A program made the translations under genes and the position numbers. From Macrostomum lignano (lineage: Eukaryota), in NCBI GenBank assembly GCA_002269645.1, contig NIVC01002860.1:70575-134574 (forward strand): 64,000 nt of DNA. Direction: 5' to 3'. Under the pieces are notes generated by a model. It was not told the DNA's origin, did not search any database, and saw nothing but the letters and a program-made list of their open reading frames with translations. Positions 4,684 to 63,034 of the stretch are shown here, in pieces. The first letter of the stretch is position 1. Each line of letters starts with the position of its first letter.

Positions 4684-5411
4684 CGTTGCGCTAGGTTGCC
4701 TTTTTTGATTATTTCTTTCTTTCTGACACTTGACTGATTGACTGATTAGGAGGCTGCAAGTTGGCTGAAACAGCTTGACAGTTCTACTCTAATCAGTTTC
4801 AAGCTCATTGTGCAATTAATCTACTCAATTTGAAATAATTTGCGAAAACTCTTGTTCAACACCGACTGCGATAAAGCGGATATCCGTGCTTATAAGATGG
4901 TGCTACGGAGCAGACGCTCATCCGGGAATTTCCTATGCGCTCGGGCCCTAATTAATTATTAATTATTTGGACGCGCAGGAAGGCAGGCGCAGCTGCACTC
5001 CAGAGCCCCCCCCCGTCCGCCAAGGCTGCCGCCTTCCCAGCCATTGATATAATTATCCCATTACTGGGCGCCTCCGGCGCAGGCGGCCTCAATTCAGGTT
5101 AATTGAAGGCAGCCGACGTTCACCTATGAGGCTGGGAATCTGATTAGCGAGGAGGCGAGCCCGGCAAACCGGGAGAGTTGAGGGGACGCGGAAGCGGCAG
5201 AATTGACAGCAAAGATTGGACGAATTTTAAAGCTGAAAAAATTGCCCGACAGGAAGTCATTGCCGGGATAATTTCTGCCAGCGTTTTCTCCGCGTCTGCT
5301 TTGAACACTCGGGCGACTGATCACTTTTTATGCGGGGCTTCAAGTGAAAAACCTTGCCATCACACTTCTTCCGCCCCTGTCTGATCTGCTTCTGCTGCTC
5401 GCAATACCACC

Positions 5412-7015
5412 CTCTCCTCCCTGTCCCCCTCCCTGTTCTCCTCCCTGTCCTTCTCCCTGTCCTTCTCCCTGTCCTCCCTGTCCTCCTCCCTGTCCTCCTC
5501 CCTGTCCTCCTCCCTGTCCTTCTCCCTGTCCTCCCTGTCCTCCTCCCTGTCCTCCTCCCTGTCCTTCTCCCTGTCCTCCCTGTCCTCCTCCCTGTCCTCC
5601 TCCCTGTCCTTCTCCCTGTCCTCCTCCCTGTCCTTCTCCCTGTCCTCCCTGTCCTCCTCCCTGTCCCCCTCCCTGTCCTTCTCCCTGTCCTTCTCCCTGC
5701 CCTTCTCCCTGTCCTCCTCCCTGTCCTTCTCCCTGCCCTTCTCCCTGTCCTTCTCCCTGTCCTTCTCCCTGTCCTTCTCCCTGTCCTCCTCCCTGTCCTC
5801 CTCCCTGTCCTTCTCCCTGTCCTTCTCCCTGTCCTTCTCCCTGTCCTCCTCCCTGTCCTCCTCCCTGTCCTCCCTGTCCTCCTCCCTGTCCTCCTCCCTG
5901 TCCTCCTCCCTGTCCTCCCTGTCCTCCTCCCTGTCCTCCTCCCTGTCCTTCTCCCTGTCCTCCTCCCTGTCCTTCTCCCTGTCCTCCTCCCTGTCCTCCT
6001 CCCTGTCCTCCTCCCTGTCCTTCTCCCTGTCCTCCTCCCTGTCCTTCTCCCTGTCCTCCCTGTCCTCCTCCCTGTCCCCCTCCCTGTCCTCCTCCCTGTC
6101 CTTCTCCCTGCCCTTCTCCCTGTCCTCCTCCCTGTCCTTCTCCCTGTCCTTCTCCCTGTCCTCCTCCCTGTCCTCCTCCCTGTCCCCCTCCCTGTCCTTC
6201 TCCCTGCCCTTCTCCCTGTCCTTCTCCCTGTCCTTCTCCCTGTCCTCCTCCCTGTCCTTCTCCCTGTCCTCCTCCCTGTCCTCCTCCCTGTCCTCCTCCC
6301 TGTCCTCCTCCCTGTCCTCCTCCCTGCCCTTCTCCCTGTCCTCCTCCCTGCCCTTCTCCCTGTCCTCCTCCCTGCCCTTCTCCCTGTCCCCCCTGTCCTC
6401 CTCCCTGTCCTCCTCCCTGTCCTTCTCCCTGCCCTTCTCCCTGCCCTTCTCCCTGTCCTCCTCCCTGTCCTCCTCCCTGTCCTTCTCCCTGTCCTCCCTG
6501 TCCTCCTCCCTGTCCTTCTCCATGTCCTTCTCCCTGTCCTTCTCCCTGTCCTCCTTGTCCTCCTCCCTACCCTTCTCCCTACCCTTCTCCCTGTCCTTCT
6601 CTCTGTCCTTCTTCCTGTCCTTCTCCCTGTCCTCCTCCCTGCCCTTCTCCCTGTCCTCCTCCCTGTCCCCCTCCCTGTCCTTCTCCTGCCCTTCTCCCTG
6701 TCCTTCTCCCTGTCCTCCTCCCTGCCCTTCTCCCTGTCCTTCTCCCTGTCCTTCTCCCTGTCCTTCTCCCTGTCCTTCTCCCTGTCCTCCTCCCTGCCCT
6801 TCTCCCTGTCCTTCTCCCTGTCCTTCTTCCTGTCCTTCTCCCTGTCCTCCTCCCTGCCCTTCTCCCTGTCCTTCTCCCTGTCCCCCTCCCTGTCCTTCTC
6901 CCTGTCCTTCTCCCTGTCCTCCTCCCTGTCCTTCTCCCTGTCCTTCTCCCTGTCCTTCTCCCTGTCCTTCTCCCTGTCCTTCTCCCTGTCCTTCTCCCTG
7001 TCCTTCTCCCTCTCC
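5412..7015. repeat. Minisatellite, 12-bp CCCTGTCCT(T/C)CT with 9-bp variants
   Basis: Direct inspection. Confidence 0.9.
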
Positions 7016-9382
7016 TTCTCCTTCTCTCCCTCTCTCTCCCTCTCTCTCTCTCTCTCTTTCTCTCTCTTTCTGTCTTATTGTCTCATTTCTTAATTTCTAT
7101 ATTCCTTCATCTCCCCCTTACTACCATTATCTCTTCTCCATTCGCACCCCTTCTGCCTCTGAACTTCCTTTCCACCCCAATCCTCCGCTCCCTCCATCCA
7201 TATAGATATCTCTCATTCTCTTAATCTTCCAATCTGTTAATCAGTAGTCAGATTCTCTTCAAAAATCCACTTTCCCGATCCCAAAAACTCCTCACTTGCC
7301 CCTCAATCCAATCGATGGTGACGCAATCCGCGGCAGCGTATAAACTTCAAAGAGCGATCGACCAGCAGAAACGCAGAAATGCAGCGGCCGAGCTTTGCCG
7401 CTTTTGCAACAACAAAGACATCAATTTACTGGTTCACTCGCTGTGCTCAGGGGAGGCAATCGGATTAAAATTAATGAGAAGGGCGGATAAACAAATCGGA
7501 TTTGCGCGCGCGGGGCTGAGGCAGGACGGTGAGGGATTAACGGCTGCGGTGCGGACCGGCTCTCAGATATCCCCACCGCGCAGAGCTGCCTCAGATAGCG
7601 GCAAAAATGCATTTGTATCGCAGTAGCGACTTCCCAGAAAAATGGTTAGCCAAAATCGGTGGGTTCGATTCTCTGCTGCAGTCGCAATGGCTACCCACTG
7701 TCATCGGAGAATCTGGGAGCAAATAATTAAACTTATGAATTCAAAACCGCGCCAAAATAACGCGTTAGAATAAACCCGGAAGTCGTAGGCGGCGGCATAG
7801 GCGGCCGTTTCGATTGTCGCCTCCGAGATGAAATTCGTTTCCGCCAATCATCTGCCAGGGCGATGGCCGGCGGGGTCAATCAGGCACCCTTTGACTGCTC
7901 TGTCTGCTCTGGCCCGGCAGGCCAGGGCCCTTCATTGGCTTCTCAAAGCCGGCCCAGAGCCGGGCTCAGGCATGACGCTGCTTGAGCTATCGCGAAATTA
8001 AGGAGCGGCCTCCGTGTCCCGGAATGCCGGAAAATTCCCTTATTATTATTTCCTTATTTGCCCGCCTCCCAATTCTCGGGAGCCGAGCAGCCCAGCCTCA
8101 TTTCATGCCAAATCCCCGGCAGTCCGGGGGGCGCTGGCTGGGAAGGCAGGACAAAAAATTGGGAGCTCCCCAAGCAGCTTGTAGCAGATGGGGAAACGGG
8201 GAAATGGATACGTGAGAAGAGGGCGGATCTTATCCTCTGCATCTCATCCGATCCTCATCAGCCTGTAAGCCTGTCTGCAGTCTCTTCTGCCCCTCTTGCT
8301 GCGGCAGGCAAAGTGTGGCTGCTGGCAGGGCCTGCGGATCTGGGAGATTGCTAAATAAGCTGCTGTTGTCTTCTGGAAGCGGCCAGGCAGAACTGTTCTG
8401 GTCGAATTGCCAGGCTCCGCTGCATCTGCCGCTGGAGTCGTTGCCAGGGCGGCCGGAGCAGCTCAGCACTTTCCCCCCAGCCTGCCAGCTCGCTGGATGG
8501 CCGACTGCGCACTTCGCTGTCCCACGGCAGCTGTCCCAGCGGCCTCGGCTCGCTAATCCCCGGGCCCGACTTCCCAGCCAGGGGAGAGAATTAATTGTCC
8601 CCTTAGAGAGCGGGGAGAGGAACTAAAAATTGCCCCCCATCACCCTGTGCGAGTGAAAGCCCGGCACTTCTTGAAGTTGGAGAAACTCGACTGCTCCCCA
8701 GATGTACTTTTCATTTCTCATCCTTGATTATTAACCTTCCCCGGACTGACGCCTGCAATTCGGCCAGCTTTCGGACAGCATTTCCTAATATAAAAAAACT
8801 TATTTTTAACAACTAGAAGCATAAAGTCCGTGTAAACCATTTTGTAAAAATGGATAGCAAATTTTTTCACATTGCTACTGATGGCAGTAGTGTATTTGGA
8901 AATTTATGCGTACGAAAACTTTATTTTTAAAGCACTTCCCCTACGGCTTGACATCAGATTGCATTTAGCTCGCATCCAGTGGCTGCCGGACAAGACTAAG
9001 CACTTAAGCTATGGACCACCTTGCGGGCAGCCGGGCAGCCTGCGGCCGCTCACCCTTCATCAAGGCCTGGGGAAACTGACTGATCAAAGTGGCCGTACTT
9101 GAAGTCTGCGGCTTCACCAAAACTGCCCTGTTCGGCTGACGGCTGCAAATCACTGCGCCGCTTACGTGCCAGTTTTGCTCTTGACAAGCTAACTTGGCCG
9201 AAATTTATTGAGTTCAAAACCAGCTTTCATCAATTTTTCACTCATATTCGATGAGGCTTTCCTCAGACGATTGTTAGATAAGATTTGCACCTGTCAGTTG
9301 TCCCACTCGGTGAGTGGCCGCCAAATTCCTGCGACATGCGATTAGATTAGCTTATTTGACTGGCAACCTGCTGAGCTGCTCG

Positions 9383-10435: not shown

Positions 10436-46038
<35,603 letters not shown>

Positions 46039-48095
46039 CCCGCTGACCTCTGCCGCTCCTCCGACCCAACGCCGTCCCTCTTGAGCTACCGTTTCGCCTT
46101 TCTCCACACACGTGGATGGACCTCTCCAAGGCCATTATTTGCACAACATAGACTGAGCTTAGCCCTGACAAATCAGCCAGGAACTGCCAATATCGACATC
46201 TACTTAGTCGGAATCACTTGTTGAGTAAAAGCATCACAAAGCATTGACTTATAGAAGAACTTACATGCACTGCATGGAAACTTCTTGTAGCATTTAATTA
46301 CGAGTCTCTTTAATTACGAGACTCTTCGTAGCAGTCTCTGTACTATAATTCTAGGGAGATAAACCCTCACTTTCGTACCTGTTACCGATAATAAATTGCT
46401 GTTATCCGCACTTTATCCAAAAGTCGATCCCAAAGTCACTAACCAACCCAGCTGTCAATGCATTTTTTATTAGCTAAGACTTGACCGCACAGCCCCAGCA
46501 GACCTTCATTCTCGCAATAGCTCCGCAATGTGTCAACCTCTGACCCCGGGTTTCCACCGCCGCAAACCATTGCAAAGTTGAACGATTTCCTCAATGCGCC
46601 CGACCGCCCACGCAATTGCGAAACCATGCTGGCTCTTGAACTTGCTCAATAAAAAATAGCAATCTGACTGACCATGACCTTGAATTTCATTAACCTAATT
46701 TGTCTGCTCTTATTACACCTATAAAAGTACTTTATCATGTCACGGATGTACAGTTTAAGGCACGTGTACTCTAACAGCAACTTTCTAAATGCATAAATAT
46801 ACACTTATTGATTCCGGATGTAACTTCAAATGCATTAAAAACTACTTATACAAGTAGTATAGAGTATCTGTTTCGGTATAGATTAATAACTGAAAAATAT
46901 CAGAAAGATTCAATTTTTCTAGATCAACGTGATCGACAGGACTCACACGAGAAGAGAAATAACTTTATTTATTTAGGAATTTTACATCTAGTGAACAGTT
47001 GCAATTACTAGCATAGTTATAAGTTTTTAATTAATTAATAATGTTAATTATCAGCTACGCAACACAACACTGGCTGGGGAGTTGCTCAGGTGACATGTGT
47101 TGCATATTGATTCAGTGCAGCAGCAGCAGCTAGTGGCTACGAAGATGCAAAGCACAGCTATGACTCATCAACTATCAGCCAAAAGCTGACGTGGACAGCA
47201 GGTGCATAAAATGAAGCGACGGGAATCCTGGATTAAAAAGAGCATTTAAAATTAATATGGATAAATTATTGAATAAAGGAGCTTGTTTTTCATTGACAGA
47301 CTAGATAAGCAGTGCGTTAAAAATAGGAAAGCAGTGACTCCAGACCACTCTAAAACGACAAGATGTCACGGCACGATTCACCAAAACGTCGCCAAAGAAT
47401 CGCCTCCGACTCTGGCGCCGTGGAGTCGCTGTAGAATCAGTGAGTTGCGGCTGCCTCACATTATGAATTTGAAATCGCATTTCGCATTTTTAACAACTCT
47501 CCGTATTCAGCCTACTTGAGTTAGTAGAAAGTTAAGCGCCAACCACAACGACTCTTTGACAGTCATTTGAGTCGTTAAAAAGTCGCAAGAGTCGCCCCCG
47601 GAGTCATCGCTGTGACGAATTTCCCAGCGGCCTGCTGAGGTGACTAGGGCAGCTTAGTGACTCATAAAAATCTGCATATATTACTCAATCTAACTATACT
47701 ACTACATCTGTTGAATTGCACAAGTAGAGAGCGAGAGTAAAGTTCGTACAAATACGGGTGTAAAATGTGTATCGCACAGTCTATAGCAGGCTTATAAGCG
47801 TCATAATAATAATAATATTGATAATATATAATAACGAAACGTAAACGCGAACACGAGCCTGATTATCTTGGGCCTAATTGACCGAATCTCCTAAGTGAAC
47901 AGCGGAGACGCGCAGGCCAAACAATTATGCAATTTTTATCTGGACAGGCGGGCAGCAGGTGAGAGCGGAGGAAAGAGGGGGGGGCACAGCGGGGAATGCA
48001 GAGTGCCGGACAAAAATAGAGACAGATATCATTAGTTTGAATTTGCATGACAGCCCAGCAGACCAGCTCAACCTGTCAATCAAATCGCCAGATGC

Positions 48096-48263
48096 TCAGT
48101 CCTCGGCCTTCGTGCCGCGCACCTGGCCGGAGGCGATCTGGCTGTCCAAATCGCGCTTGGTCCGCTCCTCCAGCTGGCGGATGTCCTCCATGGTGAGGCC
48201 GAACCACTGGTCGGTGAGGCAGAACACCTGCCTGTGGAAGTTCGTGAAGATGCGGCGCTCCAT
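48096..48263 (-). CDS. PITPNA: PITP exon 4
   Basis: CAG|[47 protein letters not shown]. Confidence 0.94.
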   Translation of the reverse strand: MERRIFTNFHRQVFCLTDQWFGLTMEDIRQLEERTKRDLDSQIASGQVRGTKAED

Positions 48264-51200
48264 CTGCGGGTGGTTTGAGGGCGGTTGGCGTCAGCATGGG
48301 TCAGTGTTGGTGTCAGCATGGGGTCAGTGTTGGTGTCAGCATGGGGTCAGTGTTGATGTCAGCATGGGGTCAGTGTTGGTGTCAGCATGGGGTCAGTGTT
48401 GGTGTCAGCATGGGGTCAGTGTTGATGTCAGCATGGGGTCAGTGTTGATGTCAGCATGGGGTCAGTGTTGGTGTCAGCATGGGGTCAGTGTTGGCGTCAG
48501 CATGGGGTCAGTGTTGGTGTCAGCATGGGGTGAGTGTTGGCGTCAGCATGGGGTCAGTGTTGGTGTCAGCATGGGGTCAGTGTTGGCGTCAGCATGGGGT
48601 CAGTGTTGGTGTCAGCATGGGGTCAGTGTTGGCGTCAGCATGGGGTCAGTGTTGGCGTCAGCATGGGGTCAGTGTTGGCGTCAGCATGGGGTCAGTGTTG
48701 GTGTCAGCATGGGGTCAGTGTTGGCGTCAGCATGGGGTCAGTGTTGGCGTCAGCATGGGGTCAGTGTTGGCGTCAGCATGGGGTCAGTTTGGCGTCAGCA
48801 TGGGGTCAGTGTTGGCGTCAGCATGGGGTCAGTGTTGGCGTCAGCATGGGGTCAGTGTTGGTGTCAGCATGGGGTCAGTGTTGGTGTCAGTGTTGGTGTC
48901 AGCATGGGTCAGTGTTGGCGTCAGCATGGGGTCAGTGTTGGTGTCAGTGTTGGAGTCAGCATGGGTCAGTGTTGGCGTCAGCATGGGTCAGTGTTAGTGT
49001 CAGCATGGGGTCAGTGTTGGTGTCAGCATGGGGTCAGTGTTGATGTCAGCATGGGGTCAGTGTTGGTGTCAGCATGGGGTCAGTGTTGGCGTCAGCATGG
49101 GGTCAGTGTTGGTGTCAGCATGGGGTGAGTGTTGGCGTCAGCATGGGGTCAGTGTTGGTGTCAGCATGGGGTCAGTGTTGGCGTCAGTATGGGGTCAGTG
49201 TTGGTGTCAGCATGGGGTCAGTGTTGGCGTCAGCATGGGGTCAGTGTTGGCGTCAGCATGGGGTCAGTGTTGGCGTCAGCATGGGGTCAGTGTTGGTGTC
49301 AGCATGGGGTCAGTGTTGGTGTCAGCATGGGGTCAGTGTTGGTGTCAGCATGGGGTCAGTGTTGATGTCAGCATGGGGTCAGTGTTGGTGTCAGCATGGG
49401 GTCAGTGTTAACGTCAGCATGGGGTCAGTGTTAACGTCAGCATGGGGTCAGTGTTGGTGTCAGCATGGGGTCAGTGTTGGTGTCAGCATAGGGTCAGTGT
49501 TGGTGTCAGCATGGGGTCAGTGTTGGTGTCAGCATGGGGTCAGTGTTGGTGTCAGCATGGGGTCAGTGTTGGTGTCAGCATAGGGTCAGTGTTGGTGTCA
49601 GCATGGGGTCAGTGTTGGTGTCAGCATGGGGTCAGTGTTGGAGTCAGCATGGGGTCAGTGTTGGCGTCAGCATGGGGTCAGTGTTGGTGTCAGCATGGGG
49701 TCAGTGTTGGTGTCAGCATGGGGTCAGTGTTGATGTCAGCATGGGGTCAGTGTTGGTGTCAGCATGGGGTCAGTGTTGGTGTCAGCATGGGGTCAGTGTT
49801 GGCGTCAGCATGGGGTCAGTGTTGGTGTCAGCATGGGGTCAGTGTTGGCGTCAGCATGGGGTCAGTGTTGGCGTCAGCATGGGGTCAGTGTTGGTGTCAG
49901 CATGGGGTCAGTGTTGATGTCAGCATGGGGTCAGTGTTGGTGTCAGCATGGGGTCAGTGTTGGCGTCAGCATGGGGTCAGTGTTGGTGTCAGCATGGGGT
50001 GAGTGTTGGCGTCAGCATGGGGTCAGTGTTGGTGTCAGCATGGGGTCAGTGTTGGCGTCAGCATGGGGTCAGTGTTGGTGTCAGCATGGGGTCAGTGTTG
50101 GCGTCAGCATGGGGTCAGTGTTGGCGTCAGCATGGGGTCAGTGTTGGCGTCAGCATGGGGTCAGTGTTGGTGTCAGCATGGGGTCAGTGTTGGTGTCAGC
50201 ATGGGGTCAGTGTTGGTGTCAGCATGGGGTCAGTGTTGATGTCAGCATGGGGTCAGTGTTGGTGTCAGCATGGGGTCAGTGTTGGTGTCAGCATGGGGTC
50301 AGTGTTAACGTCAGCATGGGGTCAGTGTTGGTGTCAGCATGGGGTCAGTGTTGGTGTCAGCATGGGGTCAGTGTTGGTGTCAGCATGGGGTCAGTGTTGG
50401 TGTCAGCATGGGGTCAGTGTTGGAGTCAGCATGGGGTCAGTGTTGGTGTCAGCATAGGGTCAGTGTTGGTGTCAGCATGGGGTCAGTGTTGGTGTCAGCA
50501 TGGGGTCAGTGTTGGAGTCAGCATGGGGTCAGTGTTGGCGTCAGCATGGGGTCAGTGTTGGTGTCAGCATGGGGTCAGTGTTGGTGTCAGCATGGGGTCA
50601 GTGTTGATGTCAGCATGGGGTCAGTGTTGGTGTCAGCATGGGGTCAGTGTTGGTGTCAGCATGGGGTCAGTGTTGGCGTCAGCATGGGGTCAGTGTTGGT
50701 GTCAGCATGGGGTCAGTGTTGGAGTCAGCATGGGGTCAGTGTTGGTGTCAGCATGGGGTCAGTGTTGGTGTCAGCATGGGGTCAGTGTTGGTGTCAGCAT
50801 GGGGTCAGTGTTGGCGTCAGCATGGGGTCAGTGTTGGCGTCAGCATGGGGTCAGTGTTGGCGTCAGCATGGGGTCAGTGTTGGCGTCAGCATGGGGTCAG
50901 TGTTGGTGTCAGCATGGGGTCAGTGTTGGCGTCAGCATGGGGTCAGTGTTGGCGTCAGCATGGGGTCAGTGTTGGCGTCAGCATGGGGTCAGTGTTGGTG
51001 TCAGCATGGGGTCAGTGTTGGTGTCAGTGTTGGTGTCAGCATGGGTCAGTGTTGGCGTCAGCATGGGGTCAGTGTTGGTGTCAGTGTTGGAGTCAGCATG
51101 GGTCAGTGTTGGCGTCAGCATGGGTCAGTGTTGGTGTCAGCATGGGGTCAGTGTTGGTGTCAGCATGGGGTCAGTGTTGATGTCAGCATGGGGTCAGTGT

Positions 51201-54200
51201 TGGTGTCAGCATGGGGTCAGTGTTGGCGTCAGCATGGGGTCAGTGTTGGTGTCAGCATGGGGTGAGTGTTGGCGTCAGCATGGGGTCAGTGTTGGTGTCA
51301 GCATGGGGTCAGTGTTGGCGTCAGCATGGGGTCAGTGTTGGTGTCAGCATGGGGTCAGTGTTGGCGTCAGCATGGGGTCAGTGTTGGCGTCAGCATGGGG
51401 TCAGTGTTGGCGTCAGCATGGGGTCAGTGTTGGTGTCAGCATGGGGTCAGTGTTGGCGTCAGCATGGGGTCAGTGTTGGCGTCAGCATGGGGTCAGTGTT
51501 GGCGTCAGCATGGGGTCAGTTTTGGCGTCAGCATGGGGTCAGTGTTGGTGTCAGCATGGGGTCAGTGTTGGCGTCAGCATGGGGTCAGTGTTGGCGTCAG
51601 CATGGGGTCAGTGTTGGTGTCAGCATGGGGTCAGTGTTGGCGTCAGCATGGGGTCAGTGTTGGCGTCAGCATGGGGTCAGTGTTGGTGTCAGCATGGGGT
51701 CAGTGTTGGTGTCAGCATGGGGTCAGTGTTGATGTCAGCATGGGGTCAGTGTTGGTGTCAGCATGGGGTCAGTGTTGGCGTCAGCATGGGGTCAGTGTTG
51801 GTGTCAGCATGGGGTGAGTGTTGGTGTCAGCATGGGGTCAGTGTTGGTGTCAGCATGGGGTCAGTGTTAACGTCAGCATGGGGTCAGTGTTGGTGTCAGC
51901 ATGGGGTCAGTGTTGGTGTCAGCATGGGGTCAGTGTTGGTGTCAGCATGGGGTCAGTGTTGGAGTCAGCATGGGGTCAGTGTTGGTGTCAGCATAGGGTC
52001 AGTGTTGGTGTCAGCATGGGGTCAGTGTTGGTGTCAGCATAGGGTCAGTGTTGGCGTCAGCATGGGGTCAGTGTTGGTGTCAGCATGGGGTCAGTGTTGG
52101 TGTCAGCATGGGGTCAGTGTTGATGTCAGCATGGGGTCAGTGTTGGTGTCAGCATGGGGTCAGTGTTGGCGTCAGCATGGGGTCAGTGTTGATGTCAGCA
52201 TGGGGTCAGTGTTGGTGTCAGCATGGGGTCAGTGTTGGTGTCAGCATGGGGTCAGTGTTAACGTCAGCATGGGGTCAGTGTTGGTGTCAGCATGGGGTCA
52301 GTGTTGGTGTCAGCATAGGGTCAGTGTTGGTGTCAGCATGGGGTCAGTGTTGGTGTCAGCATGGGGTCAGTGTTGGTGTCAGCATGGGGTCAGTGTTGGT
52401 GTCAGCATGGGGTCATTGCGGATTCAGAATAGGGTGTGGGCATACGGGGTCAGCATGGGGTGTAGGATCACATGGGGTCATTGTGGTGGAATCAGAATGG
52501 GTCGTGGGGTCACGTGGGGTCAGTGCGGGGTCAGCATGGGGTGTGGGGTCACATGGGGTCAGTGCGGGGTCAGCATGGCTTGTGGGGTCACACGGGTCAG
52601 TGTCCTGAGTCACTGAGCAGTCCACAATCGATGAAAAGCAGTCGCACCGTGTGAATGAAGCTCTCAACCCGGGTCTGCAGGCCGAACCACTTGAACTCGC
52701 AGGTGACGAGCTTGTAGGCGCACATGACCGGCCCATTGTAGTTCTGCCACCAGGGATTGTTCACCAGCGGCCCGCGGTCGGTCTTCTCCGACTTGAACAG
52801 CTTGGGGTCGAACTCGCGCTTGTAGTCAGAGTTGGAGTACAGCTTGTCGTTGGCGATGTCGATGTACACAACCTCCCGCTTGCTGAGCAGATCTGGCGGC
52901 AGCTGGTGCACATTCTGCTGCGTGCCAGCGTCCTGCACGTGCATGGACTCGATCTTGATGAAGAAGTTCTCCTTCATGTAGCCGGGGTTCTCCACCACAG
53001 TGCGGCAGTAGGGGTAGGCGTTCCAGGCCGTCTCCGTCATCTCCAGCGAGCCCGACGGCGCCAGCAGGCGGATGAACTTCGGCACCTTGCTGGAGAGGTT
53101 GAGGGCCGGGTCCAATAGTAGCAGATGGAGAGGCTTATGGGTAGGATGCAATTCAAATGGGTGCGTGGCGATTAGGGGCAGAAGTTCTCTCTGGCTGGAG
53201 GGGCCATTTAGGAGCAATTCTAAAAGGGAATTTAGGGCGATTCTCGAAGGAAATTTAGGGCGATTCTAAAAGGAAATTTAGAGGCGATCTAGAAGGGAAT
53301 TTGGGGGCGATTCTAGAAGGGAATTTAGGGGCGATTCTAGAAGGGAATTTAGGGGCGATTCTAGAAGGGAATTTAGGGACGATTCTAGAAGGGAATTTAG
53401 GGCGATTTTAGAAGGGAATTTAGGGCGATTCTAGAAGGGAATTTAAGGACGATTCTAGGAGGGAATTTAGGGGCGATTCTAGAAGGGAATTTAGGGCGAT
53501 TCTAGAAGGGAATTTAGGGGCGATTCTAGAAGGGAATTTAGGGGCGATTCTAGAAGGGAATTTAGGGGCGATTCTAGAAAGAAATTTAGGGCGATTTTAG
53601 AAGGGAATTTAGGGGCGACTCTAAAAGGAAATTTAGGGGCGATTTTAGAAGGGAATTTAGAAACGATTCTAGAGGGGAATTTTGAGAATTTTAAAAAAGG
53701 AATTTAGGGGCAATTCTAGAAGGGAATTTAGGGGCGATTATAGAGGATCTAGAAGGGAGATATGGAGATATGTCCACGCACTTCTGCAGCTTGTAGATCT
53801 TGTACGTGTACTGCCCATTCGCTCGGTTGCCTAGCAGAGGCGTCTTAGGCGGCCACTTGTTGGCCTTGACATCGAAAGGCTCGTTGTGCACCACCATGAT
53901 GCCCTCGCCGCCGCCAGTCTCCTGCTTGGATGCTTCGGCAACAGAAAAGAGCTGAGCGCAGTGGTACTCCTCCACTGTCATTGGCAGGATAACTCGGCTA
54001 GACAAAAAAGTAAAAAAAAATTGGCAAATAAGGTCAAGGCAAAAGTCAATGAGAAATCTGAGAACTAAGCCAGTTGGTCAAAAGGATTTTGTGCACTATC
54101 TACTGATTAGGACTGTTTTATAAGACACCTTTTTTAGTCATTGAAGTCCAAATCCATTATCTCTACAAACATATAGTATAGATGTAGTCAGAAAATGACT

Positions 54201-59446: not shown

Positions 59447-59956
59447 ATGGGCAACGAACTGAGCGCGCCCATTCGATCAACTCCCGAGAGTCTGTTCTCC
59501 ATCACCATGCGCTCATCCAATCAGCTGTTGGTGCTGAACGCGGGCAGCGAGCTGGGCCGGCAGCTGAACAGCCTCGTCAACAAAGAGTATGACAATGGCG
59601 TCAAGCACGAGTCCGCCTACCCGCACGACCTGCGCATCTTCCACCTCAACGATGCGCCGTTCCACGCCGACAGCGGCCAGGAGGCCGGCGTGGCCGCCAA
59701 GCGGCTTCTCTGTGTCCTGCTGCGCCACCTGCTGTCGACCGGCTTCCAGCCTGTGGTGGCCACCGACCTCTGTCGCAAGTACGAGGTATCCTCGCTGTGC
59801 TTTGCCACCGGCTCAGCGGCCGGTGCCGCCGCTGCCGCATCCGCCGCTCCTCCGTGCGACGGTCCGGTCGCCTGCGTGGCATTCAGTGACGGCTGCCTGC
59901 TGCAGCTTATCGAATGCGACAACCCGCTGATTCAGGCCATCCAACGCTGCGTCCAG
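59447..59956 (+). CDS. Four-repeat protein exon 1
   Basis: MGNELSAPIRS..AIQRCVQ; ends at CAG|GCAAGT (GC donor). Confidence 0.82.
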
Positions 59957-61269
59957 GCAAGTCATCTGGCCTGCTCTGATTGATGCAGCTCCCCAGCTCT
60001 GGTTTGGCCTCTGTGTTTCCCATTCTGGTGCTCTGCTGTTCTAAATTCTTCGAATGGTCGCTTCAAATTTTTGAGCTCATCAGCGGCTCAACCGCTTCAT
60101 CCTGATCTCCTCAGTGGGTCAACCGCTTCATCTTGAGCTTCTCGTTGGGTCAACCGCTTCATCTTGAGCTTCTCGTGGGTCAACCGCTTCATCTTGAGCT
60201 TCTTAGTGGATCAACCGCTTCATCCTGATCTCCTCAGTGCATGGGTCAACCGCTTCATCCTGATCTCCCCAGTGGGTCAACCGCTTCATCTTGAGCTTCT
60301 CGTTGGGTCAACCGCTTCATCTTGAGCTTCTCGTTGGGTCAACCGCTTCATCTTGAGCTTCTTAGTGGATCAACCGCTTCATCCTGATCTCCTCAGTGCA
60401 TGGGTCAACCGCTTCATCCTGATCTCCCCAGTGGGTCAACCGCTTCATCTTGAGCTTCTCGTTGGGTCAACCGCTTCATCTTGAGCTTCTTAGTGGGTCA
60501 ACCGCTTCATCCTGAGCTCCTTGGTGGATCAACCGCTTCATCCTGATCTCCTCAGTGCATGGGTCAACCGCTTCATCCTGATCTCCTCAGTGCATGGGTC
60601 AACCGCTTCATCTTGAGCTTCTTAGTGGGTCAACCGCTTCATCTTGAGCTTCTTAGTAGGCCAACCGCTTTATCCTGAGCTCCTCAGTGGGTCAACCGCT
60701 TCATCCTGATCTCCTCAGTGGATCAACCGCTTCATCCTGATGTCCTCAGTGGGTCAACCGCTTCATCTTGAGCTCATCAGTGGGTCAACCGCTTCATCCT
60801 GATCTCCTCAGTGGATCAACCGCTTCATCCTGATGTCCTCAGTGGGTCAACCGCTTCTTCTAGGAACTCCCAAGTCCCCCTAGTCGCCAGAGACTCTGTA
60901 CTCATTGCCATTAAACATTCACCTGGCCGCAGGCTCTGTGGCCCAACTGCCGCATCTGCACGGAGGGCTGCTACCAGTTCGAGCTGGACGGCGCGCCCTG
61001 GACTGCCGTCATCGGTGACGTGTCAGCCAGGGCTCGGCAGCTGCTGGTGCAGATCGTCCGGGAAGCCACCGGCCTCGGCTGGCAGCTGCTGCTGGCCACG
61101 CACACCAAGGACACCGACTGCTGCCTGTTCTTCCAGCACGTGGCTGAGAAGGTTGAGCTGCCGCAGCCGTTCCTCACCAATCAGACGTTCGCTGTTAGCC
61201 TGAAGGGCAAAGATATGCTGACTGTGATTGGCGCGCAGACTAACACACAGGAGTACATCATTCATAAGG

Positions 61270-61309
<40 letters not shown>

Positions 61310-62166
61310 CACCTGTCTCTAACTCTTGCCCCCCCTCCTCCTCAAAGGTGTCGCAGCTGTGGCGGCCGGGAGTGTCCCGCAGCGGTGTCACGGGCGGCAG
61401 CGCTGACTGCAGCTTCATGGCGCTGCAGCTGAAGGGCAGCCCGTGGTACTGCATCGGGGAGGAGAGCGCGCACGCCAGGCTGCTGGTGATGGGGCTGCTG
61501 GCCGCCCTGCGCAGCAAGGGCTGGCGACTGCTGAGCGCTGTGGAGCTGGCTCGCCGGTCCAACGACAAGGTGAGAGCTGCAGAGCGTAGAGTGCCTGGGG
61601 TGCTTTCAAAGGAGTTTTGGATTGTAACGTAGGAGATGGTGAAGTTTTTGGGTTCATTTGGGGTTGAAAACTTTGGGGATTGTGGAACTTCCCTGAGAGG
61701 ATCATATTTTCCCAACGCTCCCGCGCCCCTCAGGCCACGCTGGTGTTCGTGCGCGTCCCTGCGAGGAGCGGCCGCACTGCTGCGTGGCTCCGGTCAGCGC
61801 CAACCGGCTGTGGCTGCTGCAGGTGCCGTCAGACCTTCAGCAGGCCACCACGGAGCTGGTGAAGCAGAGCTACCAGTTCGGCGTGGAGGAGACTCGCGAG
61901 CGGCCGTCTTACTTGGAGCTGCGGCTGCGCCAGTCGCCTTGGGGCAGCGGCAAGAGCGGCATGGCCGGCCACGGCAGGCAGCTGATGCTGTGCGTGCTGG
62001 ACCTCTTCATGCGGCGCGCTGGCTGCCCGTCTGCTCCGTGGACGTGTCCTCGACATTCCACGACGACGACGACAGCTCGTACCCGCTGGACGTGCACAGC
62101 TGGTGGTTTGCCGGGCCGGCGGCGGCCACCCCCAGAGCTTCGAATTCGTTCAAGGGCCTGGCCTGA
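59447..62166 (+). CDS. Uncharacterised four-repeat-domain protein, putative N-myristoylated; join(59447..59956,60933..61268,61348..61569,61734..62166), ~500 aa after correcting two 1-nt deletions in exon 4
   Basis: GC3-rich exons, phase 0 at all three introns, MGNELS start, four internal repeats sharing P[WF]..A..LL..L...G[WF]..(S/T).D..L.F. Exon 4 needs two frameshifts (~61758, ~62018) to keep the repeat. Confidence 0.8.
60088..60856. repeat. Minisatellite, 30-35-bp GGTCAACCGCTTCATC(C/T)TGA.CT.CTC.GTG (intron 1 of four-repeat gene)
   Basis: Direct inspection. Confidence 0.9.
60933..61268 (+). CDS. Four-repeat protein exon 2
   Basis: ALWPNC..FELDGAPW..LGWQLLLAT..EYIIHK; phase 0/0. Confidence 0.82.
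61269..61308. repeat. (GTCT)n microsatellite at start of an 79-nt intron
   Basis: Direct inspection. Confidence 0.85.
61348..61569 (+). CDS. Four-repeat protein exon 3
   Basis: VSQLWRPG..LKGSPW..KGWRLLSAVELARRSNDK; donor GTGAGA. Confidence 0.82.
61734..62166 (+). CDS. Four-repeat protein exon 4 (contains two apparent 1-nt deletions)
   Basis: ATLVFVRV / CEERPHCCVAPVSANRLWLL..RQSPW..DLFMRR / WLPVCSVDVS..SWWF..KGLA-TGA, spread across three frames. Confidence 0.7.
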
Positions 62167-62455: not shown

Positions 62456-63034
62456 AATAGCATGGATTGCTAATCTAGCCTATCACGGGTGCAGGAATAG
62501 AATGGATTGCTAATCTAGCCTATCATGGGTGCAGGAATAGCATGGATTGCTAATCTAGCCTATCATGGATGCAGGAATAGAATGGATTGCTAATCTAGCC
62601 TATCATGGGTGCAGGAATAGAATGGATTGCTAATCTAGCCTATCATGGGTGCAGGAATAGCATGGATTGCTAATCTAGCCTATCATGGTGCAGGAATAGA
62701 ATGGATTGCTAATCTAGCCTATCACGGGTGCAGGAATAGCATGGATTGCTAATCTAGCCTATCACGGGTGCAGGAATAGCATGGATTGCTAATCTAGCCT
62801 ATCATGGGTGCAGGAATAGAATGGTTTGCTAATCTAGCCTATCACGGGTGCAGGAATAGAATGGATTGCTAATCTAGCCTATCATGGATGCAGGAATAGA
62901 ATGGATTGCTAATCTAGCCTATCATGGGTGCAGGAATAGAATGGATTGCTAATCTAGCCTATCATGGATGCAGGAATAGAATGGATTGCTAATCTAGCCT
63001 ATCATGGGTGCAGGAATAGAATGGATTGCTAATC
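62456..63034. repeat. Minisatellite, 40-bp GAATGGATTGCTAATCTAGCCTATCATGGGTGCAGGAATA (~14 copies)
   Basis: Same unit as 9383-10109. Confidence 0.93.

What the first reader, a model, noticed from the sequence alone, without database searches (positions are those of the whole stretch)
59447..62166. Uncharacterised, putatively myristoylated protein made of four copies of an unnamed ~100-aa alpha/beta domain
Seen: MGNELS (M-G-x-x-x-S). R1 FSITMRSSNQLLV..FHLNDAPF..AKRLLCVLLRHLLSTGFQPVVATDL..SLCF. R2 ACVAFSDGCLLQL..FELDGAPW..ARQLLVQIVREATGLGWQLLLAT..CLFF. R3 FAVSLKGKDMLTV..LQLKGSPW..ARLLVMGLLAALRSKGWRLLSAVEL..TLVF. R4 CCVAPVSANRLWL..LRLRQSPW..GRQLMLCVLDLFMRRGWLPVCSVDV..SWWF. I cannot assign a named family. 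Inference: the helix-G[WF]-strand ending resembles the GFRP/KCTD C-terminal fold, which oligomerises into rings, so four fused copies might form a single-chain pseudo-symmetric ring anchored to a membrane.
Basis: partly seen in the sequence, partly recalled or inferred. Interest (0 to 1): 0.78.

Follow-up and report, generated by a model that had tools for sequence, protein, structure and literature searches.

The report
Myristoylated four-domain ring protein, uncharacterised family
This flatworm gene encodes an unstudied 500-residue protein, probably lipid-anchored, made of four fused copies of a small domain that in other proteins forms rings from separate subunits. It belongs to a widespread unnamed eukaryotic family whose members usually carry a docking motif for Nedd4-type ubiquitin ligases.

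Summary
The window is Macrostomum lignano DNA, 100% identical to GenBank NIVC01002860.1. The finding is a real four-exon gene at 59447-62166 on the + strand. Its intact product is the 500-aa 'hypothetical protein' PAA53345.1.

**Repeats.** The four ~110-aa repeats are real. Shuffle z-scores are 5.9-13.5 for five of six pairs. Family-level hhalign gives 99.7-99.9% probability for all six pairs.

**Frameshifts.** This copy lacks one G at 61755 and one at 62018, so exon 4 is frameshifted twice. A sister contig differs only by homopolymer-length indels, so these are probably PacBio assembly errors.

**Family.** No Pfam family matches. An exhaustive HMMER search finds 466 relatives, all unnamed where a name exists. 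They come from cnidarians, a ctenophore, nematodes, fungi, Perkinsus, an oomycete and a diplonemid.

**Structure.** AlphaFold2 gives pLDDT 89.8 and pTM 0.91. Each repeat has ββαββαββ topology. The best PDB neighbour is T. cruzi Q4D6Q6, a homotetramer, followed by five T. brucei mitoribosome-assembly chains, KCTD12 H1 and GFRP.

**Motifs.** The N-terminal MGxxxS myristoylation consensus is conserved. PPxY motifs are about tenfold enriched in the family but absent from this paralogue.

**Verdict.** This is a new architectural variant of a known fold, and its function is untested.

The parts
59447..59956 (+). Exon 1 (codons 1-170). Holds the MGNELS start, repeat 1, an Ala-rich linker and the first part of repeat 2.
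   Evidence: An in-frame stop lies two codons upstream. The same boundaries on L001 and L002 give a 1503-nt CDS that translates exactly to P0001.
59447..59464 (+). M-G-N-E-L-S, the N-myristoylation consensus (Gly2, Ser6).
   Evidence: Fits PROSITE PS00008, G-{EDRKHPFYW}-x(2)-[STAGCN]-{P}. 60 of 126 full-length homologues fit the pattern at their N-terminus.
59483..59815 (+). Repeat 1 (residues 13-123), ββαββαββ.
   Evidence: DSSP on the AF2 models. The domain model has pLDDT 93.7.
59957..60932 (+). Intron 1, 976 nt, GC-AG (donor GCAAGT). Holds a 31-bp minisatellite at 60072-60857.
59858..61151 (+). Repeat 2 (residues 138-243), split by intron 1 into 59858-59956 and 60933-61151.
60933..61268 (+). 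Exon 2 (codons 171-282).
61269..61347 (+). Intron 2, 79 nt, GT-AG. Starts with (TGTC)10.
61176..61762 (+). Repeat 3 (residues 252-366), spread over exons 2, 3 and 4.
61348..61569 (+). Exon 3 (codons 283-356).
61570..61733 (+). Intron 3, 164 nt, GT-AG.
61734..62166 (+). Exon 4 (codons 357-500 plus stop). In this copy it is read through only after restoring two missing G's.
61754..61755 (+). First 1-nt deletion: GG becomes G, giving CGCG-TCC where the intact copies have CGCGGTCC. It shifts the frame after ...ATLVFVR.
   Evidence: Window versus L001 and L002. The window's own reading equals the 398-aa GenBank product P0002.
62017..62018 (+). Second 1-nt deletion: GG becomes G, at the codon for Gly in ...LFMRR-G-WLPV.
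61766..62124 (+). Repeat 4 (residues 368-487). It carries the family-typical insertion and the 'YPLDVHSWWF' ending.

Best explanation
A protein-coding gene of Macrostomum lignano encodes a 500-aa cytosolic protein.

1. The protein is co-translationally N-myristoylated on Gly2 and so tethered to a membrane (inferred from motif and conservation).
2. It consists of four tandem homologous ββαββαββ domains of the Q4D6Q6/GFRP-like fold (shown by repeat statistics and confident structure prediction).
3. The four domains pack into one rigid body, the single-chain equivalent of the homotetrameric 'propeller' of T. cruzi Q4D6Q6 and of the ring oligomers formed by GFRP and KCTD12 H1. Compact packing is supported by pTM 0.91. 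Ring geometry is inferred.
4. The body acts as a membrane-tethered scaffold or adaptor. In most relatives a PPxY motif in a disordered tail would recruit Nedd4/Rsp5-type HECT ubiquitin ligases through their WW domains. This is inferred from about tenfold motif enrichment. The paralogue in the window has no PPxY, so it either works without the ligase or modulates its PPxY-bearing paralogue.

The two frameshifts in the window copy are most likely PacBio homopolymer errors in one of several near-identical duplicated contigs.
For: **Identity and gene model**
- 99% match to PAA53345.1. The window is identical to NIVC01002860.1.
- The same exon boundaries on two other contigs give exactly the 500-aa protein.
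- The GenBank models derive from an RNA-seq-guided transcriptome assembly (PMC5730564). This is indirect evidence of expression.

**Repeats**
-.

**Family**
- 466 relatives at E<=1e-3, 188 at <=1e-10 and 28 at <=1e-30. Most are about 450-550 aa.

**Structure**
- Full-length model: pLDDT 89.8, pTM 0.91, with four units of ββαββαββ.
- Single-domain model: pLDDT 93.7.
- Best PDB neighbour is Q4D6Q6 (6xyb/6xyd): TM 0.61-0.63, probability 1.00.
- Next come five T. brucei mt-SSU assemblosome chains, KCTD12 H1 and GFRP.
- Q4D6Q6 is the only PDB sequence found by the repeat profile (E 0.18). hhalign gives 84% probability over 74 columns.
- Q4D6Q6 is a ββαββαββ homotetramer (PMC10899635).

**Myristoylation motif conservation**
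-.

**PPxY**
- 51 of 126 full-length homologues carry it, 46 of them in the last 80 residues, against 4.8 ± 2.0 in shuffles.
- It sits at the N-terminus in many of the ~200-330-aa homologues, including the Beauveria protein.

**Frameshifts as assembly errors**
- There are 0 substitutions in 3520 bp against L002. Every difference is a G-run or C-run length change.
- The assembly is Canu/PacBio with 180 Mb of >=95% identical duplicated blocks.
Against: - No experiment exists on any member of the family.
- Foldseek E-values (1e-3 to 1e-2) and the HMMER E-value to Q4D6Q6 (0.18) are individually weak.
- I could not obtain model coordinates, so 'ring' and 'pseudo-fourfold' are not verified.
- P0001 itself has no PPxY, so the ligase-adaptor idea does not apply directly to this gene.
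- 59 of 126 full-length homologues do not start with MG. Many of these may be mis-called N-termini, but that is an assumption.
- The frameshifts could be real, in a decaying redundant copy.
Confidence: 0.6

Rival explanations
1. The window copy is a true pseudogene. It would be a redundant duplicate (the DV1 line carries extra chromosome copies) that has acquired two real frameshifts in exon 4 and makes at most a truncated 398-aa product lacking repeat 4.
For: There are two independent 1-nt deletions in exon 4. GenBank annotates the truncated product PAA54793.1 on this contig. The assembly was Pilon-polished, yet the deletions remain.
Against: There are no substitutions at all against the intact copy on NIVC01003101.1 over 3520 bp. 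All six gap positions (five sites) are homopolymer-length changes, three of them in introns. This is the signature of PacBio error in duplicated sequence where short reads multi-map. A decaying copy should also carry substitutions.
Confidence: 0.2
2. The protein is a GFRP-like or ACT-like regulatory module. The ring would bind a small-molecule ligand and/or a specific enzyme or G-protein subunit, as GFRP binds GTP cyclohydrolase I and KCTD12 H1 binds Gβγ. It would regulate that partner at the membrane, with no role for ubiquitin ligases.
For: Fold-level hits to GFRP (probability 0.99) and KCTD12 H1, including 6m8s, the H1-Gβγ complex. The G-x-P-W loop is nearly invariant in the repeats (G57 and P59 in more than 90% of 90 repeats), as expected for a functional or interface site. 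This paralogue lacks PPxY.
Against: No sequence match to the GFRP or KCTD families. ACT-domain hits have very low TM-scores. Nothing identifies a partner. This view does not explain the strong PPxY enrichment in the family.
Confidence: 0.15
3. The protein is a secreted or extracellular factor like T. brucei Q586B2, the Q4D6Q6 homologue reported to be secreted and to induce IL-10, rather than a membrane-tethered cytosolic scaffold.
For: Q4D6Q6/Q586B2 is the closest structural relative, and Q586B2 is described as secreted (PMC10899635).
Against: The protein starts with a conserved myristoylation consensus rather than a signal peptide. The family carries cytosolic PPxY motifs. Its many free cysteines and lack of hydrophobic leader fit a cytosolic protein (read from the sequence).
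Confidence: 0.05

Closest known systems
Q4D6Q6 (T. cruzi, PDB 6xyb/6xyd) and Q586B2 (T. brucei), described as a 'conserved kinetoplastid-specific' family
   Same: Same ββαββαββ topology and similar size (~107 aa against ~110 aa per repeat). Best Foldseek hit for both the domain and the full model (TM 0.61-0.63, rmsd 3.9 Å, 17-20% identity). It is the only PDB sequence reached by the repeat profile, and hhalign gives 84% probability. It shares a collinear 'helix-GW-strand ... LFF' ending and an 'NPxxW' loop in place of 'GxPW'. It forms a tetramer, matching the four fused copies here.
   Different: The kinetoplastid proteins are single-domain and assemble from four chains, whereas here four diverged copies sit in one chain. 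The alignments here cover Q4D6Q6 only from residue 25, so its N-terminus and any myristoylation or PPxY motifs were not examined. Q586B2 is reported as secreted. The sequence similarity is sub-significant by HMMER (E 0.18).
GTP cyclohydrolase I feedback regulatory protein (GFRP; PDB 7acc, 7ala)
   Same: It works as a ring oligomer; that GFRP is a pentamer rests on my own knowledge, not a tool result.
   Different: 84 aa and a homopentamer. 11-12% identity and no Pfam GFRP match. It is soluble, with no lipid anchor and no repeats.
KCTD C-terminal / H1 domains (KCTD12 H1, PDB 6qzl and 6m8s; KCTD1, 9foi)
   Same: Related fold (probability 0.72-0.97). They are ring-forming oligomerisation and partner-binding modules. 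The GFRP-KCTD fold relation is discussed in PMC7618933 (listed and not read further).
   Different: TM-scores are only 0.34-0.51. No BTB/T1 domain is present here. There is no sequence similarity.
T. brucei mt-SSU assemblosome chains 6sga FQ-FU and 9hny FQ/FS/FU. These are probably the pentameric mt-SAF24; my inference from bioRxiv 10.64898/2026.08.02.742330.
   Same: A domain of these chains superposes on the repeat (probability 0.99-1.00, query-normalised TM 0.52-0.62). Five copies are present in one complex.
   Different: They are mitochondrial ribosome-assembly factors of 230-280 aa, with 10-11% identity. The chain identity was not verified here.
PPxY-bearing Nedd4/Rsp5 adaptors (ARRDC/ART arrestin-related proteins, NDFIP1/2). 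This is a functional analogy from general knowledge.
   Same: Membrane-associated proteins with PPxY motifs in a disordered tail. The family here shows 51/126 members with PPxY against about 5 expected.
   Different: Unrelated folds. The window's own protein has no PPxY. No binding data exist.

Membership tests
Q4D6Q6/Q586B2 family | ββαββαββ topology of a ~110-aa domain | tested here: met
   DSSP on the AF2 models shows this topology in each of the four repeats. The family's topology is taken from PMC10899635.
Q4D6Q6/Q586B2 family | Structural superposition on 6xyb/6xyd | tested here: met
   Top PDB hit, TM 0.59-0.63, rmsd 3.9 Å, probability 1.00, E 1.2e-3. Also the best domain-level hit of the full model.
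Q4D6Q6/Q586B2 family | Significant sequence similarity | tested here: inconclusive
   hmmsearch with the repeat profile gives E 0.18, and with the full-length profile E 1.2. hhalign gives 84% probability and pairwise E 7e-6 against residues 25-118. phmmer with the diplonemid homologue finds nothing.
Q4D6Q6/Q586B2 family | Four subunits arranged as a propeller-like tetramer | not testable with these tools
   Four fused copies with pTM 0.91 fit this feature, but no coordinates are returned, so the arrangement could not be compared with the 6xyb assembly.
GFRP (Pfam PF06399) | Match to the family HMM | tested here: not met
   No hit for the protein, for 49 homologues or for 90 repeats.
GFRP (Pfam PF06399) | GFRP fold | tested here: met
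   7ala_G and 7acc_C: probability 0.99, target-normalised TM 0.61-0.62, query-normalised 0.49.
KCTD proteins | N-terminal BTB/T1 domain | tested here: not met
   No BTB hit in Pfam.
KCTD proteins | C-terminal/H1 domain fold | tested here: inconclusive
   6qzl and 6m8s: probability 0.72-0.97 but TM only 0.34-0.51. 9foi: probability 0.44.
N-myristoylated proteins | Met-Gly start fitting G-{EDRKHPFYW}-x(2)-[STAGCN]-{P} | tested here: met
   G-N-E-L-S-A at 59450-59467. The pattern is conserved in 60 of 126 full-length homologues; 67 start with MG.
N-myristoylated proteins | Covalent myristate on Gly2 | not testable with these tools
   Needs metabolic labelling or mass spectrometry.
PPxY adaptors of Nedd4/Rsp5 ligases | PPxY motif in an accessible region | tested here: not met
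   P0001 has none. It is present in 51/126 relatives, including the M. lignano paralogue P0017 (PPSY at residue 521), and at the N-terminus in many of the ~200-330-aa homologues.
DUF4177 (PF13783) | Match above Pfam's threshold | tested here: not met
   Only 3 of 49 proteins (best E 6.9e-4) and 1 of 90 repeats (E 0.013) match. None of these is P0001.
Raftlin (PF15250); a lead from memory | Match to the family HMM | tested here: not met
   No hit.

The most novel reading that the evidence does not exclude
This gene would represent an ancient, pan-eukaryotic and so far unnamed family of lipid-anchored single-chain ring scaffolds. The family has four fused Q4D6Q6/GFRP-like domains in animals and protists, apparently two in fungi and eight in Perkinsus. 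Its ancestral job would be to bring Nedd4/Rsp5-type ubiquitin ligases to membranes through PPxY motifs. The supposedly 'kinetoplastid-specific' Q4D6Q6/Q586B2 virulence-factor family would be a single-domain offshoot that rebuilds the same tetramer from separate chains.
Probability: 0.3. Interest if true: 0.72.

Novelty: new variant of a known kind. Interest (0 to 1): 0.6.

Why it matters
- It would define a new domain family and architecture with no Pfam model. The family is present from fungi and protists to cnidarians, nematodes and flatworms. No vertebrate or arthropod appears among the named hits seen here.
- It gives a clean natural example of a homo-oligomeric ring turned into a single chain by tandem fusion. 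This lets the four positions diverge.
- It places the T. brucei virulence factor Q586B2 and T. cruzi Q4D6Q6, described as kinetoplastid-specific, in a much wider evolutionary context.
- The combination of a myristoyl anchor and PPxY motifs predicts a new class of Nedd4/Rsp5 adaptors. This is directly testable in Nematostella, nematodes, fungi or M. lignano, which has transgenesis and RNAi.

Tried and rejected
- **Pfam.** Scans of the protein, 49 homologues, 7 further diverse homologues and 90 isolated repeats gave nothing real, only scattered noise.
- **PDB sequence search with the protein.** Only an Ala-rich match to ribosomal protein P1 at E 0.13, which is an artefact.
- **Word-indexed homologue search.** With the flatworm protein and with the 49-sequence alignment it returned only the query itself. 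The candidate lists were probably swamped by low-complexity words. It worked only when seeded with the jellyfish homologue.
- **Raftlin / DUF4177 relationship.** My own idea from memory of 'helix-GW-strand' motifs. It is not supported beyond sub-threshold DUF4177 hits.
- **Viral structure library.** No meaningful match.
- **Literature search for the gene identifiers.** No papers.
- **Full Q4D6Q6 sequence.** The paper's supplement holds the alignment only as an image. I pieced residues 25-118 together from HMMER output instead.
- **mt-SAF chain identities.** A search of PMC8784144 found nothing.
- **UniRef names of relatives.** 'Fucose-1-phosphate guanylyltransferase', 'HET domain', 'RNase H domain', 'Calpain catalytic domain' and 'Mediator subunit 13' have no support from any Pfam scan. 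I treat them as automatic mis-naming or chimeric gene models.
Full report
**What the window is.** Translating the region and searching 5.8 billion protein clusters gave one hit at 99% identity. It is the 500-aa 'hypothetical protein BOX15_Mlig032350g1' of the free-living flatworm Macrostomum lignano, P0001 (PAA53345.1 = PAA86591.1). The window's gene region is 100% identical to GenBank contig NIVC01002860.1 (locus L003). It is 99.8% identical to NIVC01003101.1 (L002) and about 95% identical to NIVC01000272.1 (L001). The neighbours fit an animal genome. A phosphatidylinositol-transfer-protein exon lies upstream on the minus strand, and laminin-G/EGF exons lie further away. In the sister loci a kinase/CNH gene lies downstream. 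The window is extremely rich in minisatellites.

**Gene model.**
- The CDS has four exons: 59447-59956, 60933-61268, 61348-61569 and 61734-62166.
- Intron 1 is a 976-nt GC-AG intron (donor GCAAGT). Introns 2 and 3 are GT-AG, 79 and 164 nt.
- Applying these boundaries to L001 and L002 yields a 1503-nt CDS that translates exactly to P0001. This validates the model.
- An in-frame stop lies two codons upstream of the ATG.
- The GenBank annotation of this assembly was made from an RNA-seq-guided transcriptome assembly (PMC5730564). The model therefore has indirect expression support. I found no paper mentioning the gene identifiers.

**Frameshifts.** The window copy lacks one G next to 61755 and one next to 62018. 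Exon 4 therefore runs through three frames. GenBank accordingly annotates a truncated 398-aa product on this contig, P0002.

Against L002 there are no substitutions over 3520 bp. There are six gap positions at five sites, all homopolymer-length changes: four G-run sites and one C-run site, three of them intronic. The assembly is Canu/PacBio, Pilon-polished, with 180 Mb of duplicated blocks at >=95% identity. I therefore judge these to be assembly errors at about 0.75-0.8. A real pseudogenised duplicate is the alternative. L001 differs in the CDS by one synonymous change only.

**Repeat check.**
- Pairwise local alignment of the four segments against 300 shuffles gives z = 13.5 (R1-R4), 10.4 (R2-R3), 7.5, 6.1, 5.9 and 2.6 (R2-R4).
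- The four segments align with 22-28% identity to R1 and share invariant Pro, Leu and Gly positions.
- At family level, profiles of each repeat position from 49 homologues match one another at 99.7-99.9% hhalign probability, with E 1e-27 to 1e-33 over about 100 columns.
- The repeat consensus is ...SL..xDxLRxx..P......I...W..GIQ.E......EFKL.G.PW........R.L....L..L...GW......D.S........FF.

**Relatives.**
- Pfam has no model for the family.
- An exhaustive HMMER scan of 1.84 billion representatives found 466 proteins at E<=1e-3, 188 at <=1e-10 and 28 at <=1e-30. Most are 450-550 aa and align end to end.
- Named sources include two further M. lignano paralogue groups (Mlig033074, Mlig031305).
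- Cnidarian sources are Rhopilema, Oculina, Montipora and Nematostella LOC5501260. The ctenophore is Mnemiopsis.
- Nematode sources are Anisakis, Steinernema and Plectus.
- Other sources are the fungus Beauveria (283 aa, apparently two repeats), Perkinsus (1038 aa, eight repeats), the oomycete Thraustotheca (fused in the model to an ABC transporter) and the diplonemid Lacrimia.
- Every credible name is 'hypothetical' or 'uncharacterized'. A few UniRef names are mutually inconsistent and have no Pfam support.

**Structure.** AlphaFold2 with a 49-sequence alignment gives mean pLDDT 89.8 and pTM 0.91. It shows four consecutive ββαββαββ units joined by short linkers. Only the Ala-rich linker (127-131) and the last eight residues fall below pLDDT 50. 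A pTM this high for a 500-residue, four-domain chain means the relative placement of the domains is predicted with confidence.

A single repeat modelled with 90 repeat sequences gives pLDDT 93.7. Its Foldseek neighbours in the PDB, in order:

| Neighbour | PDB | Scores |
|---|---|---|
| T. cruzi Q4D6Q6 | 6xyb / 6xyd | TM 0.59-0.63, rmsd 3.9 Å, 17-19% identity, probability 1.00 |
| Five T. brucei mt-SSU assemblosome chains | 6sga FQ-FU, 9hny | probability 0.99-1.00 |
| KCTD12 H1 | 6qzl, 6m8s | probability up to 0.97 |
| Human GFRP | 7ala_G, 7acc_C | probability 0.99, target-normalised TM 0.61-0.62 |
| KCTD1 | 9foi | probability 0.44 |

All E-values are only 1e-3 to 1e-1. The top group is nonetheless coherent: small α/β domains that work as ring homo-oligomers. 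Q4D6Q6 is described as a ββαββαββ monomer forming a propeller-like homotetramer (PMC10899635).

Independently, the repeat profile finds Q4D6Q6 as the only PDB sequence at E<=10 (E 0.18). hhalign against its residues 25-118 gives 84% probability. The alignment is collinear and includes the 'GW-strand ... LFF' ending.

I conclude that the domain belongs to the GFRP/Q4D6Q6-like fold class and is probably, but not provably, homologous to Q4D6Q6. I could not check ring geometry because coordinates are not returned.

**Motifs bearing on mechanism.**
- *Myristoylation.* MGNELSA fits the PROSITE N-myristoylation pattern. Of 126 full-length homologues, 67 begin with MG and 60 fit the pattern, typically MG[GAN]xxS.
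- *PPxY.* These motifs, the classical ligands of Nedd4/Rsp5 WW domains (general knowledge), occur in 51 of 126 full-length homologues. Forty-six of them lie in the last 80 residues, often as ...PPPSY[DE]EA at the very C-terminus. Composition-preserving shuffles give 4.8 ± 2.0. Many of the ~200-330-aa homologues, including the Beauveria protein, carry PPxY in their N-terminal tail instead.
- *This gene.* The window's protein and its closest paralogue P0005 have no PPxY. The paralogue P0017 has PPSY.

**Mechanism proposed.** The protein would be a myristoyl-anchored, rigid pseudo-tetrameric scaffold. At family level it would act as a membrane adaptor that recruits HECT ligases. For this paralogue the role would be ligase-independent or modulatory.

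- Shown here: the gene model, the repeats, the conservation and the motif statistics.
- Predicted: the fold and the compact packing.
- Inferred: lipidation, ring geometry, ligase recruitment and any cellular role.

**Novelty.** The gene is already deposited as a hypothetical protein, and the fold class is known. As far as the libraries and papers available here show, three things have not been described:
- the four-fold fused architecture with an N-terminal lipidation signal and recurrent PPxY tails;
- the family's breadth across eukaryotes;
- its likely link to the 'kinetoplastid-specific' Q4D6Q6/Q586B2 proteins.

I rate it a new variant of a known kind, with interest 0.6.

Noticed in passing
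window 60072-60857: Intron 1 is almost filled by a minisatellite: a 31-bp unit repeated about 25 times, with a higher-order 159-bp period, 86-92% matches. Most of the ~5% divergence between the paralogous contigs L001 and the window appears to fall in and around this array.
   Followed up: partly
window 59957-59962: Intron 1 uses a GC donor (CAG|GCAAGT ... CCGCAG|G). This is the only placement with near-canonical ends that reproduces the annotated protein.
   Followed up: partly
window 61270-61309 and 62456-63034: A (TGTC)10 microsatellite sits at the very start of intron 2. A 40-bp tandem array (14.5 copies, 95% matches) lies about 300 bp downstream of the stop codon.
   Followed up: no
window 52597-53217 (-) and 52651-53118 (+): A large exon of a phosphatidylinositol transfer protein gene lies on the minus strand (Pfam IP_trans, E 7e-62). 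The UniProt entry A0A1I8ITV7 (P0004, 677 aa, named 'Fucose-1-phosphate guanylyltransferase') fuses the antisense translation of this exon to the repeat protein. It is a chimeric gene model with a spurious name.
   Followed up: partly
window 29092-29619 and 32171-32683 (+): ORFs with laminin-G and EGF domain matches. These are probably exons of a neurexin/laminin-like gene, interleaved with long minisatellites.
   Followed up: no
window 1-52600, e.g. 47959-52616, 5344-7224, 10518-14256: There is an exceptional density of long tandem arrays with strong strand skews (GC skew up to ±0.5). These create many long spurious ORFs, for example a 950-aa '[13 protein letters not shown]...' ORF. This fits the reported 15% simple and tandem repeat content of this genome (PMC5730564).
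   Followed up: no
homologues P0075 (Perkinsus chesapeaki, 1038 aa) and P0131 (Thraustotheca clavata, 1863 aa): Perkinsus has an eight-repeat protein in which a second 'MGNNPLSS' appears mid-chain. This could be a tandem gene pair merged into one model or a true duplication. The oomycete model fuses two repeats to an ABC transporter, possibly a mis-joined model.
   Followed up: no
homologues P0009, P0017, P0156, P0175 (UniRef names): UniRef names for family members are mutually inconsistent: Mediator subunit 13, RNase H domain, HET domain and Calpain catalytic domain. The Pfam scan that included P0009 and P0017 found no such domains; P0156 and P0175 were not scanned.
   Followed up: partly
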